NCBI GenBank assembly: GCA_013115145.1
Contig: JAAPAO010000120.1
Span: 6,750 to 70,749 of the forward strand
DNA length: 64,000 nt
Source of the DNA: Perkinsus chesapeaki ATCC PRA-425
Lineage: Eukaryota > Protista > Perkinsozoa
Reading direction: 5' to 3'
Shown here: positions 33,501 through 45,820 of the stretch, piece after piece
Numbering within the stretch: the first letter of the stretch is position 1
How the letters are laid out: every line of letters starts with the position of its first letter
Translations under genes and position numbers: made by a program
The notes under the pieces: generated by a model
Told to the model about the DNA's origin: nothing
What the model saw: the letters and a program-made list of their open reading frames with translations, nothing else
Databases searched by the model: none

Positions 33501-34295
33501 CTGAGACTCCACCTTCGCTGGAGCTACACTCTCCTGAAGATGTCGCCGCTGCATTCCTCAGAGTGCTGCTGTATTTCGGCTAACCATCATGTTTATTGTT
33601 TGTTGGTGTTCAGGAACTGGTGCCACAGGGAGCCGGACCAACATCAACCGAGAAGCTGCTCGTGCTGCGGAAAGCTGTGGAGCGTCTCAGGGATGTACAG
33701 AAATTGCGGTAGGCCTCCGAAGCCGTAGAAGACACAGATAGATACTCTCTCTAGGTTAGAGGCAGTCGACCTGCTGAGCCAGCGAGAGTCGACCCTAGCA
33801 GCATCGCTGGAAGGTTCTGGCCCTCAAGTCCTCGCGCGGTCACTGCTACACCCGACGCCTGACTGGCTTCCTACTGATGACCTCTGCATTAAGGATGATG
33901 ACTTGGCGGATGAGTTCATTACGGCACTACATCGGGTCCTGCCCGAGAAGCGTTTGCGTCAAGAGGTGCCAGTCGAGGACAGCGAAACCGAGATCGAAGG
34001 AGGGCCTCCGCCAGATCCCTCTCGTGCTGCACGGAATGCTGTGAAATGGCGGCGACTTACTCGGCGATGTGGAGTTCGTAAGCCTTCAAGTGTGGCCCTA
34101 CATCCCGGAAGGTCACGTACCAAAACAGCAGGCGACGAGACTGACACAGAGATGATGCCGCCAAAGCATGCATCGCGTGGGCGAGGGAGGAAGCCAGGCT
34201 CAAAGCGGTCTGCAGCTGCAGCTGCTGCTGCCACCGTGCGCAGGCCGGACAGGTTCCCTGCTGCTGTCCATTATGAGATTATGGATTTCGTATAA
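30564..34295 (+). CDS. Large multi-exon hypothetical protein
   Basis: Series of GT-AG-flanked coding frames ending ...AAVHYEIMDFV*, with a basic RGRGRKPGSKR stretch near the end. Could be more than one gene; no family recognised. Confidence 0.5.
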
Positions 34296-35116
34296 TACGC
34301 ATAGTACTGCAAGATGACACAGTCTTTTTGTTAACAATCCTACTACAACATTTGAAGCTTCATTTGTATTATTGTAAATTACGTTGGAGAAAAAATGCCA
34401 ATGCTGTGTTGTTAGTTAATGAACATTAGGACAGAAAAAGAGAGCCAATATGAGCGATTTGGTAGATGCTCCGAACTTGAGCGAGCGCGAGAGTTTCAAG
34501 TCCAACGCCGCAATTCGCCTTAGCCCAACACCAATGGACTTGAATATACAAAGGATATGAACTCTTGTTATCTTTTCCAAACTTCTGATGTACTTAGTAA
34601 TGCGTCTCAATGATGTATTGTCTTGTAGTACGCTCTACGAGCCGGAATCAATCCCTCGCTCGTCTATTTGCGTTGCCACGATTTTAAAAGGGAGTTATAC
34701 TGTGCCTTTGCGATGAGTCAACTTGAGCGGTACTGTAAAGGTTATTTATAAAATATGCACACCCACCCCAAACTCCGTTTAACGTAATATCATTGCTTGT
34801 GACATGCTTTCATGCGACTGCCAAGCATCCCGCTTGTTTTGGAAAGCACTAAGTGCTTCGAGGTACAGTTCGAGCCGGAGTCTGTTCATCACCTGTGTAT
34901 TTGTCTTGCCACACAATCCTGCGCAAGCTAGATGGTACATTTACAATTGTAACGACAATATGATTGTTGTCGGACCATATATTGTTCCAATCCTGGCTCA
35001 AGCTCGTGGTGAGAACACATACTCGATACGTATATGGTATTTGCTGGTATTATGCGATTGCCTTCCGACAGGTGCTAAGCATGTTCAATTGATAATAATC
35101 GGGCATTGTTTAAGCC

Positions 35117-35186
35117 TCAGCAATAGGAAGTTATCAATCACTTACAATCCGTTCTAACGTATGTGATATTTGATTAAGATCATCAT
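35117..35186 (-). ncRNA. Box C/D snoRNA candidate A (LSU guide)
   Basis: Minus strand: C box ATGATGA, D' CGGA, D CTGA. The D' guide is antisense to TCTAACGTATGTG (plus 35153-35165), matching the conserved LSU GAGUCUAAC region. Confidence 0.65.
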
Positions 35187-35203
35187 TGGCATCATCACGT
35201 AGG

Positions 35204-35268
35204 TCAGAGTATATTAAAGTTGTTTGAATCGATCACAGTATCATTCACTTGATAATATCTTTCATCAT
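35204..35268 (-). ncRNA. Box C/D snoRNA candidate B (SSU guide)
   Basis: C box ATGATGA, D box CTGA. The 16-nt guide is antisense to GTATATTAAAGTTGTT (plus 35209-35224), a universally conserved eukaryotic SSU segment, and lies one base from the D box. Confidence 0.85.
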
Positions 35269-35300
35269 ACCATCAATTTCGTAGGAGATCAGCCAGTAAG

Positions 35301-35354
35301 TCAGCGAGTAATCTCTTCACAATGTTCTGTGGAAAGAAGATTGCTTCGCATCAC
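35301..35354 (-). ncRNA. Box C/D snoRNA candidate C (LSU guide), paralog of D
   Basis: C box GTGATGC, D' CAGA, C' GTGAAGA, D CTGA. The D' guide is antisense to GGAAAGAAGA (LSU GGGGAAAGAAGACC). Confidence 0.7.
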
Positions 35355-35387
35355 CTCCTAGACACAATACTTTAATCAGACGGTAAG

Positions 35388-35447
35388 TCAGCGATTCAAT
35401 TCTTCACAGTAATTCTGTGGAAAGAAGAATATGTCTTATCGCATCAC
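35388..35447 (-). ncRNA. Box C/D snoRNA candidate D (LSU guide), paralog of C
   Basis: Same boxes and D' guide as candidate C; the sequence between boxes has diverged while boxes and guide are conserved. Confidence 0.7.
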
Positions 35448-35472
35448 ATCAACTTCCCCATTCAAGCATGGC

Positions 35473-35548
35473 TCAGATTTGCAGAATTCCAAAGGTGTTC
35501 TCTTCACGCGCGTGGCGTCAGAGTCTAACGTATGAAAGATGTCATCAT
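35473..35548 (-). ncRNA. Dual-guide box C/D snoRNA candidate E (5.8S + LSU)
   Basis: C ATGATGA, D' CTGA, C' GTGAAGA, D CTGA. The D guide is antisense to ATTTGCAGAATTCC (5.8S UUGCAGAAUUC region); the D' guide is antisense to AGTCTAACGTATG (LSU). Confidence 0.88.
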
Positions 35549-35671
35549 TATCATGCATCATAAACCAATCCCATTAACAAGAATGACACACAACATTAAA
35601 AACAACGACGCAACCGCGAATCAAGGTCGCAGGGAACAACCTCGCCAATGATCACGACTTGGAGAAAGCAT

Positions 35672-36357
35672 TTACTCTTCCTGGTTGATGGAGAAGTAAC
35701 GAAGCTCGTAGGTGTTCTTGTTGCTGGCGACAACCCTCAAGAAATCACGGAGGAGCTGCTTCTTCAAGTACTTCTTGGTCAAGTACTACACAAAACAAAA
35801 AATCATGCAATTAATTAAGACGCGCAATCCACACGCATTATATTCCTCTTAACGATATACCTACTAGGAAGACGCACACGACAAGCGCGGCGTTTTCCAG
35901 GGAAGATAGCCCTGGGCTCACCTTAAGATAACGCTTGGAGAAGGGGGCAGCGGCGGTCACAACAATCTTGGCCTTGCCAGTCTTGGTGACAGTGACGCTC
36001 TCACCGAGGTTACCGGTCTTGCCATCAACCTTAATGCGGTTGCGGAAGAACTCAGCCTGAAACAGGAGTAGATACAACCAAGAACTGGGGATAGATAACT
36101 ATCAATGTCCTCAACGATGCATTCAGAAAAGAATTAGTCAGCTGTGGTATAATCATCATGATCATACGGGGAAAGAATAGGTCTCATCATTATAGCATCG
36201 GCAATGTCAGGTCAAATTACGAGCAACCCGCCCCACTTACCAAAGACTCGGCGTCGATGACGTTGTCGTTGACAGGCTTCTCGCAGTCAACAACGAACTT
36301 CAAGGTCTGCTTCTCGACCTTCTTGTTGGCCTTCTTAGCGATTCCCTTAACAACCAT
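35672..36357 (-). CDS. RPL22: 60S ribosomal protein L22e (snoRNA host gene)
   Basis: Three exons: [39 protein letters not shown] / [23 protein letters not shown]...PFSKRYLK / [31 protein letters not shown]...EE*. Confidence 0.96.
36138..36190 (-). ncRNA. Intronic box C/D snoRNA candidate F in RPL22 intron 1 (LSU guide)
   Basis: Sense to RPL22 within a 180-nt intron: C ATGATGA, D' ATGA, C' ATGATGA, D CTGA. The D' guide is antisense to CGGGGAAAGAA (plus 36167-36177; LSU AGCGGGGAAAGAAG). Confidence 0.78.
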
Positions 36358-44400: not shown

Positions 44401-45820
44401 CGCTGATGGTGATGCTGCCTGCCGACTGCATAACGGAAGCGCTCCCTGGACCAGCTGGCCTATGTTGGCCTGCTGCCGTCGGCCCAGCTGGCAGTTGCGA
44501 TGGTGGTGGTGGTGGTGCAGTACTCGCCACTGCTGATACTGCCTTAGGTCTAGCCTGGCCCTGGATACCATAGCCAGTAGCCATGGCAAGCGGAGGGGAC
44601 ATTTGCCCTTGGGGCCCTGCCGCATCACCAATGCATCTTCCCATACCTGCCGTTTACTACCTGTATACTGCTGCTGCTGGGTTGATGGCGGTGAGGCGGC
44701 TGCTGCTGTTGCCTTGGGCTGAGGAGGGCTCGAGCATCTGCCAGGTATCCACAGCTCCAATAGCCAGCAGATATCCCCTCCCCTTACTGAGTTGCTGGCG
44801 ATGCTGCCGTTGGCGAGCTTTGCTGTTGCGCTGCCTTCCCCTTGCCACCCTTTCCTCCTTTTCTTTGCCGTTGATCATATCGACTCCCCGAGCGGGCGAC
44901 ACCCAGGCTCGGCCGTCCAGTGGCCTGGTTGGGAGCTCCCTGGTTGACCGGCGGGCTAACGACCTTCAGAGGGGTAGGAAGCAGCGCACTTCCCACCGCC
45001 GCCGCCGTTGCTGGTAGTGCTGGTGGTGGCTGCTGGTCACTTCCAGTCGAATAACGTGGCGCGTGACTAGGGCCCGCAGCAGCCGGCGACTGCTGCTGCT
45101 GCAGCTGGTTCTGGTGATTCTGACTAATCGGTCGGGCCGGGCTCTGTTGAACCCATCGTTGCGGTTGGCTGGCTCCGCCTTTCCCAGGTGGTGTGGCCGC
45201 CACTGTGTGCCCCCCAAACTGGTTTGCATACTGCTGCTGTTGCTGATAGAGGCCAGCTGCGTCCTGCTGTCCTCCTCCCCCTGCATAAGGCATATTTTGC
45301 TGCTGTACCCCATGTGGACGGGCAAAGGCAGCGGCCGCCGATTGATAGTACTGATTGTACTGCGGGTAATAAGGGGCCGCCGCCGCCGCAGCCGCACCAG
45401 CGTAAGCCGGCTGCCCAGCTTGACCCGCCGATGATGATGATGCTTGCTGCCCAGCCGAGGCAACAAAACCAGGGTACCCCTGGGCTTGGGCATAGTACTG
45501 ACATCGACTGGAACTAACTATTTGCTATCCAACGCTACTACTACCTGTCTCCCAGCAGAAGCAGCTCCGCCCCACGGCGAGAAGTCACCATTATTAGAAG
45601 CACTGTTGCCGGGTGTTGCGGCCGCCGCCGCCGTAACTGCCGTCATCTGCTGCTGCTGATGATACTGCTGGCTGTTGGCCACCGACATGGGTCCTATATG
45701 GTTGGCATACTGCCCGGGGGCGGTGGTAGGAGGGGCCGAGGCCACCAGACCTGGCATGAACGCACGTTGTGGTGGTGGGGGTGGGGGCTGTCCTCCTCCT
45801 GCTCCTCCGTAATAAGACAT
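41441..45820 (-). CDS. Large Gln/Pro-rich protein with a MATH-like domain and a Trp/acidic repeat region
   Basis: Q/P/A-rich N-terminal exons. HKHRMQIYPRG and GWSGLLDL...AGWIDSSGKLVIRSMV resemble the start and end of a MATH/TRAF fold. W-rich exon at 42063-42680; predicted end ...YRRQSDKW*. Confidence 0.55.

What the first reader, a model, noticed from the sequence alone, without database searches (positions are those of the whole stretch)
35117..35548. Unannotated tandem cluster of five compact C/D snoRNAs directly downstream of RPL22
An apparently empty AT-rich gap holds five consecutive C..D units of 54-76 nt on the RPL22 strand, 17-33 nt apart. The cluster starts about 120 bp after the RPL22 stop. 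Each unit has a 10-16 nt guide next to a D or D' box matching conserved rRNA. This suggests a polycistronic or read-through snoRNA precursor coupled to a ribosomal protein gene, with guides near the small end of the eukaryotic size range.
Basis: partly seen in the sequence, partly recalled or inferred. Interest (0 to 1): 0.75.

Follow-up and report, generated by a model that had tools for sequence, protein, structure and literature searches.

The report
snoRNA gene cluster behind Perkinsus RPL22
Just after the ribosomal protein L22 gene of the shellfish parasite Perkinsus chesapeaki lie five tightly packed box C/D snoRNA genes, with a sixth inside the gene's first intron, that should guide methylation of ribosomal RNA; they look real, but this layout is already known from malaria parasites, plants and yeast.

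Summary
On the minus strand, 115 nt after the RPL22 stop codon, five box C/D units of 72-91 nt are separated by spacers of only 9-13 nt (window 35113-35556).

- **Guides tested on the genome's own rRNA.** U1 pairs 15-16 bp with 5.8S (human Gm75 / Arabidopsis Gm79 site). U4 pairs 16 bp perfectly with 18S (Arabidopsis Um602 site). U2 and U3 each pair 10 bp with LSU helix 73.
- **Guides not testable on own rRNA.** U1 and U5 share a D' guide matching the universal LSU segment GAGUCUAAC. That part of the LSU is missing from this assembly.
- **Chance control.** Across the whole window, no other CUGA-adjacent match reached 14 bp. Controls peaked at 13 bp.
U0 lies in RPL22 intron 1 (36115-36200). It is a SNORD12/snR190-type snoRNA, and U2 and U3 are its paralogues.
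- **Sizes.** These are ordinary for eukaryotic C/D snoRNAs, not unusually small.
- **Co-transcription with RPL22.** This is plausible but only inferred.
- **Precedent.** The arrangement is known in Plasmodium (PMC2656528).
- **Earlier notes of this scan.** This same stretch was read twice. Similar clusters were noted in this genome after RPL24, RPS21, RPL13A and RPS4.

Verdict: new members of a known kind, of moderate interest.

The parts
36241..36357 (-). RPL22 (eL22) exon 1, 39 codons from the ATG at 36357
   Evidence: Reading frame and GT splice donor read from the sequence. The exon model fits the 121-aa P. chesapeaki eL22 protein.
36115..36200 (-). U0: box C/D snoRNA in RPL22 intron 1, SNORD12/snR190 type. 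C box at 36190, D' AUGA at 36165, C' at 36159, D box at 36126, 6-bp terminal stem CGAUGC/GCAUCG.
   Evidence: Rfam RF00581 scores 32.2 bits, E 4.9e-4, below the gathering score of 43. It pairs 12 bp with own LSU GCGGGGAAAGAA, ending directly at D'. Fold z-score is -3.9 with the terminal stem formed.
35922..36056 (-). RPL22 exon 2, 45 codons
   Evidence: 100% identical to residues 40-84 of P. chesapeaki eL22, P0043. Pfam PF01776 is recorded for the homologues.
35672..35785 (-). RPL22 exon 3 with stop codon TAA at 35674-35672
   Evidence: Translation.
35466..35556 (-). U1: box C/D snoRNA, 91 nt. C AUGAUGA at 35548, D' CUGA at 35521, C' GUGAAGA at 35507, D CUGA at 35476, 5-bp stem GCAUG/CAUGC.
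   Evidence: The D guide pairs 15-16 bp with own 5.8S GAUUUGCAGAAUUCCG, placing G74 of the fragment at position 5. The D' guide is complementary to AGUCUAACGUAUG. Its core AGUCUAAC is in every metagenomic LSU that covers this region, and 11 nt match one of them.
35372..35452 (-). U2: box C/D snoRNA, about 81 nt, paralogue of U3 and U0. C GUGAUGC at 35447, D' CAGA at 35417, C' GUGAAGA at 35407, D CUGA at 35379, weak 5-bp stem.
   Evidence: It pairs 10 bp with own LSU GGAAAGAAGA, ending 1 nt before CAGA. A second element, UCGCUGACU, pairs with the adjacent AGUCAGCG.
35282..35360 (-). U3: box C/D snoRNA, 79 nt. C GUGAUGC at 35354, D' CAGA at 35329, C' GUGAAGA at 35320, D CUGA at 35292, stem UAGGAG/CUCCUA.
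   Evidence: Same 10 bp LSU guide as U2. The second element CUCGCUGACU pairs 10 bp (1 G-U) with own LSU AGUCAGCGGG. The terminal stem appears in the MFE fold.
35201..35272 (-). U4: box C/D snoRNA, 72 nt. C AUGAUGA at 35268, C'-like GUGAUCG at 35236, D CUGA at 35207. Only a 2-bp terminal stem.
   Evidence: 16 bp perfect Watson-Crick pairing with own 18S GUAUAUUAAAGUUGUU, ending 1 nt before box D. The predicted target is U147 of L002.
35113..35191 (-). U5: box C/D snoRNA, 79 nt. C AUGAUGA at 35186, probable D' CGGA at 35151, C' GUGAUUG at 35141, D CUGA at 35120, 3-bp stem GCC/GGC.
   Evidence: Weak Rfam C/D hits: snoR122 at 29.8 bits and snoU25 at 25.3 bits, both below gathering. Its D' guide shares the 11-mer CAUACGUUAGA with the U1 D' guide. 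The D guide has only a 9 bp match to own LSU.

Best explanation
The stretch is a polycistronic cluster of five genuine box C/D snoRNA genes (U1-U5) directly downstream of the eL22 gene of Perkinsus chesapeaki. A sixth, U0, lies in the gene's first intron.

How it most likely works:
1. Each RNA assembles with the fibrillarin snoRNP proteins on its C/D and C'/D' kink-turns.
2. It base-pairs with pre-rRNA through the 10-16 nt element in front of box D or D'.
3. This places the nucleotide opposite the fifth guide position in the methyltransferase site.

Predicted targets:
- 5.8S: G in GAUUUG*CAG (U1, D guide)
- 18S: U in GCGUAU*AUU (U4)
- LSU helix 73: third G of GCGGGG (U0)
- LSU helix 73: A in GGGGAA*AG (U2, U3)
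- LSU: two adjacent nucleotides in GAGUCU*A*AC (U1 and U5, D' guides)

U0, U2 and U3 are SNORD12/snR190-type. They carry a second antisense element that pairs with the rRNA just 5' of the first target. They may therefore also, or instead, act as folding placeholders, as yeast snR190 does.

Biogenesis (inferred): the five units are cut and trimmed from one precursor. That precursor is most likely a read-through or 3'-extended RPL22 transcript. U0 would be released from the spliced intron. snoRNA output would thus be tied to ribosomal protein gene expression.
For: Shown:
- Boxes, spacing and stems.
- 15-16 bp and 16 bp guide duplexes with the genome's own 5.8S and 18S, correctly placed next to box D. 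These are unique in the 64-kb window. Reversed and antisense controls reach at most 13 bp.
- 10-12 bp duplexes of U0, U2 and U3 with own LSU at the SNORD12/snR190 target stretch, plus a sub-threshold Rfam SNORD12 hit for U0.
- The second element pairs with AGUCAGCG. This includes a G that is specific to this genome's LSU; most other eukaryote LSUs sampled read AAUCAGCG.

From the literature:
- The 5.8S site equals human Gm75 / Arabidopsis Gm79 (PMC8351944).
- The 18S site lies 22 nt after the 530-loop U, which equals Arabidopsis Um602, guided by snoR115 (PMC8351944 supplementary table). The bases at the four neighbouring listed Arabidopsis sites also fit L002.
- snR190/snR107/SNORD12 have ASE1 at G2395/G2483/G3878 and an ASE2 that reinforces pairing (PMC8536666; bioRxiv 10.1101/2024.10.03.615557).

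For coupling to RPL22:
- Same strand and a 115-nt gap.
- Spacers of 9-13 nt.
- The paralogue U0 sits inside the RPL22 intron.
- In Plasmodium, snoRNAs lie downstream of and inside the 3'UTR of RP genes and move between intron and downstream positions (PMC2656528).
Against: - No expression, methylation or snoRNP data were available.
- No Rfam family reaches its gathering score.
- U4 has almost no terminal stem, and U2 and U3 carry GUGAUGC rather than RUGAUGA.
- U5's D guide and several other guides have no convincing target in rRNA, U6 or U2.
- The LSU segment targeted by the U1 and U5 D' guides is absent from this assembly, so that match rests on other eukaryotes' rRNA.
- The U2/U3 guide duplex of 10 bp is within chance range on its own.
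- Two other RP loci checked the same way, RPS19 and RPL35A, show no such units. RP coupling is therefore not universal in this genome.
Confidence: 0.6

Rival explanations
1. The snoRNAs are real, but the cluster is its own transcription unit. A promoter would lie in the 115 nt after the RPL22 stop codon, or the cluster would be a separate non-coding host transcript. It would then be only a neighbour of RPL22, not processed from RPL22 transcripts.
For: Independent polycistronic snoRNA clusters are the rule in plants, trypanosomatids and several yeast loci (background in PMC2656528). In Plasmodium, RT-PCR linked PFS9 to the upstream RP mRNA but failed for PFS11 (PMC2656528). Nothing in the sequence proves read-through here.
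Against: Only 115 nt separate the stop codon from U1, and this must also hold the RPL22 3'UTR and poly(A) site. A paralogue, U0, depends on RPL22 transcription by sitting in its intron. Other notes of this scan, unchecked by me, report similar clusters right after other RP genes in the same genome.
Confidence: 0.3
2. U0, U2 and U3 do not guide methylation. Like yeast snR190, they would act as chaperones or placeholders that shield LSU helix 73 during early pre-60S assembly.
For: Yeast snR190 has the same two-element design, yet G2395 is not methylated (PMC8536666). U2 and U3 have degenerate C (GUGAUGC), D' (CAGA) and C' (GUGAAGA) boxes. Their predicted A site has no counterpart in the yeast, human or Arabidopsis rows I saw. 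Two elements cover about 19 contiguous rRNA nucleotides.
Against: S. pombe snR107 and human SNORD12C do methylate the equivalent G, and Arabidopsis G2385 is methylated (bioRxiv 10.1101/2024.10.03.615557; PMC8351944 table). U0 places exactly that G at position 5.
Confidence: 0.3
3. The motifs are a chance cluster in AT-rich intergenic DNA, and no RNA is made.
For: Loose C..D patterns are frequent in the window: 32 found against 21.6 expected. 11-13 bp rRNA matches next to CUGA occur by chance.
Against: Five back-to-back units sit on one strand. Two guide duplexes of 15-16 bp match the own rRNA at sites methylated in other eukaryotes. The paralogues conserve exactly the boxes and guides.
Confidence: 0.03

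Closest known systems
Plasmodium snoRNAs downstream of or inside the 3'UTR of ribosomal protein genes (PFS8/9/13 after L7a, PFS11/12 after L5, PFS10 in the L5 intron; Mishra et al. 2009, PMC2656528)
   Same: Both are alveolates. C/D snoRNAs, some in small clusters, lie on the same strand just after an RP gene's stop codon. Related copies switch between an intron and the downstream position.
   Different: Here there are five units packed in 445 nt only 115 nt after the stop codon, against 367-629 nt in P. falciparum. Co-transcription is not shown here; in Plasmodium it was shown by RT-PCR and ESTs for one case.
SNORD12/12B/12C (human), snR190 (S. cerevisiae), snR107 (S. pombe)
   Same: U0 has an antisense element before D' that places the G2395/G3878-equivalent G of LSU helix 73 at position 5. 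It also has a second element before box D that extends pairing next to that site. As in human, there are three paralogues at one locus.
   Different: Rfam RF00581 scores below gathering. U2 and U3 are shifted 3 nt, predicting an A. No 15-nt complement to LSU domain I (yeast box B) was found. There is no U14 neighbour. The host is an RP gene, not a lncRNA or a snR190-U14 unit.
Arabidopsis snoR115 (18S Um602) and snoR39BY (5.8S Gm79 = human Gm75)
   Same: U4 and the U1 D guide predict methylation at the same rRNA nucleotides (PMC8351944 tables).
   Different: Only the target was compared. U1 pairs its 5.8S guide with an LSU GAGUCUAAC guide, whereas snoR39BY pairs it with 25S G812.
Polycistronic snoRNA clusters of plants, trypanosomatids and yeast
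   Same: Tandem same-strand snoRNA genes with short spacers, presumably cut from one precursor.
   Different: Those clusters usually have their own promoters or lie in introns. This one abuts the 3' end of a protein-coding RP gene.

Membership tests
box C/D snoRNA | Box C (RUGAUGA) near the 5' end and box D (CUGA) near the 3' end | tested here: met
   U0, U1, U4 and U5 have AUGAUGA. U2 and U3 have GUGAUGC (one mismatch). All have CUGA.
box C/D snoRNA | Short terminal stem bringing C and D together | tested here: met
   6 bp in U0, 5 bp in U1, 5 bp (weak) in U2, 6-8 bp in U3, 3 bp in U5. U4 has only 2 bp.
box C/D snoRNA | Antisense element of at least 10 nt ending 0-2 nt before D or D', complementary to rRNA | tested here: met
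   Against own rRNA: U1 15-16 bp (5.8S), U4 16 bp (18S), U0 12 bp, U2 and U3 10 bp (LSU). The U5 and U1 D' guides match only other eukaryotes' LSU because the own segment is missing.
box C/D snoRNA | Stable 60-100 nt RNA bound by fibrillarin, Nop56, Nop58 and Snu13; target is 2'-O-methylated | not testable with these tools
   No RNA-seq, RIP or RiboMeth-seq data were available.
SNORD12/snR190/snR107 | ASE1 before D' pairs with LSU helix 73 with the G2395/G3878-equivalent at position 5 | tested here: met
   Met for U0: CCCCGU|AUGA puts the third G after the C of GCGGGG at position 5 (numbering from PMC8536666). Not met for U2 and U3, whose register is 3 nt further 3'.
SNORD12/snR190/snR107 | Score at or above the Rfam RF00581 gathering threshold | tested here: not met
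   U0 scores 32.2 bits against a threshold of 43. U2 and U3 give no hit.
SNORD12/snR190/snR107 | Second antisense element (ASE2 / box B) before box D | tested here: inconclusive
   An 8-10 bp element pairs next to the ASE1 target, as described for part of yeast box B (PMC8536666). No domain I complement was found, but the own LSU 5' end is available only as a degenerate copy.
RP-gene 3'UTR / read-through snoRNA cluster (Plasmodium type) | snoRNAs on the same strand shortly after the RP gene's stop codon | tested here: met
   115 nt after the eL22 stop codon, same strand.
RP-gene 3'UTR / read-through snoRNA cluster (Plasmodium type) | A transcript physically joins the RP coding region and the snoRNAs | not testable with these tools
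   No transcript data were available.

The most novel reading that the evidence does not exclude
In Perkinsus, snoRNA clusters fused to the 3' ends and introns of ribosomal protein genes may be a main, conserved way of making snoRNAs. One transcript would then deliver both a ribosomal protein mRNA and several rRNA-modifying or rRNA-folding RNAs. At RPL22, this unit would include a locally triplicated SNORD12/snR190-type RNA. Its shifted copies would either create a lineage-specific methylation or act as placeholders at the root helix (H73) of the peptidyl-transferase domain.
Probability: 0.3. Interest if true: 0.55.

Novelty: new member of a known kind. Interest (0 to 1): 0.35.

Why it matters
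- The paper search found nothing dedicated to Perkinsus snoRNAs. These six genes give concrete, testable predictions of rRNA methylation sites in a shellfish pathogen that branches at the base of the dinoflagellates.
- They extend the RP-gene-linked snoRNA arrangement, first called unique to Plasmodium, to another alveolate lineage.
- They show that the two-element SNORD12/snR190 design predates the split between opisthokonts and alveolates.
- The practical value is for annotation, and as a handle on how snoRNA and ribosomal protein output are co-ordinated.

Tried and rejected
- **Rfam at gathering thresholds.** No match in the window. Only sub-threshold C/D hits appeared with the E-value setting.
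- **Own rRNA.** Rfam SSU and LSU searches of the genome gave only fragments. A Perkinsus-specific LSU pattern found nothing in the metagenome collection. A universal pattern gave 115 eukaryotic rDNA loci, and one of them served as a BLAST query to collect the own fragments. LSU model positions about 618-950 and SSU 343-453 and 1064-1399 are not in the assembly. A direct pattern search for the GGAGUCUAAC region found only chance hits.
- **Spliced RPL22 model.** The exons were searched one by one, by reference. The joined protein was not built.
- **Orphan guides against own U6 and U2 snRNAs.** Nothing convincing.
- **U2/U3 D-guide region as a true guide.** Its best conserved match is 8 nt, to an LSU 3' segment that differs in the own copy. 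Rejected in favour of accessory pairing.
- **The gap downstream (34790-35112).** No significant fold (z -0.28) and no Rfam hit.
- **Generality.** The RPS19 and RPL35A loci show no C/D unit by the same test.
- **My own numbering error.** My first assignment of the LSU target to yeast A2280/A2281 (snR13), made from memory, was wrong. It was corrected to the G2395 region using PMC8536666. Likewise the GAGUCUAAC site is near yeast C663, not A649.
- **Other motif hits.** The other CUGA-adjacent 11-13 bp matches, and a C..D motif at 45432-45501, lack C boxes or guides and are taken as chance.

Full report
**Organism and gene.** The window is positions 6750-70749 of a 70,749-nt contig. The cluster listing for eL22 holds a P. 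chesapeaki protein (P0043, KAF4672091.1) seen on a contig of exactly that length. Exon 2 of the gene here is 100% identical to residues 40-84 of P0043. RPL22 lies on the minus strand in three exons: 36357-36241, 36056-35922 and 35785-35672, with stop codon TAA at 35674-35672. The exons were searched singly by reference; the joined protein was not built.

**The observation.** On the same strand, starting 115 nt after the stop codon, five units follow each other with spacers of 13, 11, 9 and 9 nt.

| Unit | Coordinates | Length |
|---|---|---|
| U1 | 35556-35466 | 91 nt |
| U2 | 35452-35372 | 81 nt |
| U3 | 35360-35282 | 79 nt |
| U4 | 35272-35201 | 72 nt |
| U5 | 35191-35113 | 79 nt |

- Each unit begins with AUGAUGA (U1, U4, U5) or GUGAUGC (U2, U3) and ends with CUGA.
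- Internal D'/C' pairs are recognisable: CUGA/GUGAAGA in U1, CAGA/GUGAAGA in U2 and U3, CGGA/GUGAUUG in U5.
- Terminal stems appear in the MFE folds of U1, U2, U3 and U5. U4 has only two possible pairs.
- A loose C..D pattern alone is not rare in the window: 32 matches against 21.6 expected.
- Five non-overlapping units on one strand within 445 nt is very unlikely, at about 0.08 expected by my estimate.

**Own rRNA.** The assembly holds the rDNA only as small pieces. I collected them with Rfam, pattern searches and a BLAST using a metagenomic eukaryotic rDNA unit as query.
- Recovered: SSU model positions 1-342, 454-1063 and 1400-1831; 5.8S 1-120; LSU 200-617; and LSU 951 to the 3' end.
- The LSU 5' end is present only as a degenerate copy.
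- Missing: LSU about 618-950, and SSU 343-453 and 1064-1399.

**Guides.** Tested against these own fragments:
- **U1, D guide.** Pairs 15-16 bp (1 G-U) with 5.8S GAUUUGCAGAAUUCCG. G74 of the fragment falls at the fifth position.
- **U4, D guide.** Pairs 16 bp, all Watson-Crick, with 18S GUAUAUUAAAGUUGUU. It ends one nucleotide before box D and targets the U in GCGUAU*AUU.
- **U2 and U3.** Each pairs 10 bp with LSU GGAAAGAAGA, one nucleotide before CAGA.

In a window-wide scan of every CUGA on both strands, these 15 bp and 16 bp duplexes were the only ones of at least 14 bp. Reversed and antisense rRNA controls gave at most 13 bp. The other 11-13 bp hits have no C box.

The D' guides of U1 and U5 share the 11-mer CAUACGUUAGA. 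They are complementary to (AG)UCUAACGUAUG. The core GAGUCUAAC is universal in LSU and the following bases vary between lineages. One metagenomic LSU matches 11 nt. The own segment is missing, so this target is inferred.

These guides have no convincing target in rRNA, U6 or U2:
- U5's D guide, whose best match is 9 bp.
- U4's D' region.
- U0's D region.

**A sixth snoRNA and a paralogue family.** RPL22 intron 1 contains U0 (36200-36115).
- It has a 6-bp terminal stem and canonical boxes, and its fold z-score is -3.9.
- It gives a sub-threshold Rfam hit to SNORD12: 32.2 bits, E 4.9e-4, against a gathering score of 43.
- Its element before D' pairs 12 bp with own LSU GCGGGGAAAGAA. This puts the third G after the C at position 5.
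- PMC8536666 places C2392 next to the predicted snR190 target G2395 in helix 73. By that numbering, this is the G2395 / human G3878 / S. pombe G2483 site (bioRxiv 10.1101/2024.10.03.615557). The site is also mapped as methylated in Arabidopsis, at G2385 (PMC8351944 table).

U2 and U3 align with U0 over the boxes, this guide and a second block, GCUGACU. Their guide is shifted by 3 nt, predicting the A in GGGGAA*AG. I saw no counterpart for that site in the yeast, human or Arabidopsis rows.

The second block pairs 8-10 bp with AGUCAGCG(GG), immediately 5' of the first target. Most other eukaryote LSUs sampled read AAUCAGCG there. The snoRNAs therefore match a base specific to their own rRNA. This two-element design is described for snR190, where part of box B reinforces pairing near G2395 (PMC8536666), and as ASE1/ASE2 of snR107/SNORD12.

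**Target identities.**
- **5.8S.** The G corresponds to human Gm75 / Arabidopsis Gm79. The equivalence is stated in PMC8351944. The position matches fragment numbering and my own count of the human sequence from memory.
- **18S.** The U lies 22 nt 3' of the 530-loop U, taken by me from memory as yeast U578. In the Arabidopsis table, U580 (human Um627, yeast Um578) is followed by G597, U602, G609, U613 and position 621. The bases at the corresponding offsets in L002 are G, U, G, U and A. U4's target therefore equals Arabidopsis Um602 (snoR115), a site not methylated in yeast or human.
- **LSU GAGUCUAAC.** By my alignment from memory, the predicted nucleotides lie 2-3 nt 5' of yeast C663. This numbering is not verified.

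**Mechanism.**
- *Shown:* sequence architecture and complementarity.
- *Established knowledge:* C/D snoRNPs methylate the nucleotide paired to the fifth guide position.
- *Inferred:* the five units are one precursor, because the spacers are too short for promoters. That precursor is a read-through or long-3'UTR RPL22 transcript. The grounds are the same strand, the 115-nt gap, the intronic paralogue and the Plasmodium precedent (PMC2656528).
- *Open:* U0, U2 and U3 may act as methylation guides, as snR190-like placeholders, or as both.

**Context in this genome.** Other notes of this scan report similar clusters after RPL24 (followed up and judged real, conserved in three species and of a known kind), RPS21, RPL13A and RPS4, and in an RPS28 intron. 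I did not verify these. This same stretch was also read a second time (s1-235030). The RPS19 and RPL35A loci, which I picked myself, show no such unit within 1.5 kb by the same test. The coupling is therefore frequent at best, not universal.

**Limits.**
- No transcript or methylation data exist here.
- Part of the rRNA is missing from the assembly.

**Verdict.** This is a real and well-formed C/D snoRNA cluster with a sixth intronic member. It adds new members to a known kind in a lineage with no described snoRNAs. The sizes are ordinary. Interest is moderate.

Noticed in passing
U2 and U3 of the cluster are its paralogues, so three copies sit at one locus, as with human SNORD12/12B/12C.
   Followed up: yes
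G000 contigs C2389, C2253, C1889, C2590, C1160, C3059, C2713, C3219, C2962 (loci L126, L002, L123, L130, L122, L125, L006, L003/L124, L133): The rDNA of this assembly is broken into 0.3-1.3 kb contigs. LSU model positions about 618-950 and SSU 343-453 and 1064-1399 are absent. Truncated or degenerate LSU pieces lie inside larger contigs (C2962 near 13.4 kb, C3219 near 4.4-5.0 kb).
   Followed up: partly
L144 (G000:C2837:216474-219605) and L146 (G000:C2891:5013-8126): The RPS19 locus is only 28% GC and the RPL35A locus 36% GC, much lower than most of this window (about 50-58%). Neither has a C/D unit with an rRNA guide within 1.5 kb. I did not check whether C2837 belongs to the same organism.
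   Followed up: no
window 45432-45501 (plus): C-box-like UGAUGAUGAUGC and CUGA with a 5-bp flanking stem in GC-rich sequence, but no rRNA complementarity. Taken as chance.
   Followed up: partly
window 34250-35112: The rest of the AT-rich gap downstream of the cluster (about 860 nt) has no Rfam hit. The 34790-35112 part has no significant fold (z -0.28). The strand and identity of the next gene below 34250 were not resolved.
   Followed up: partly
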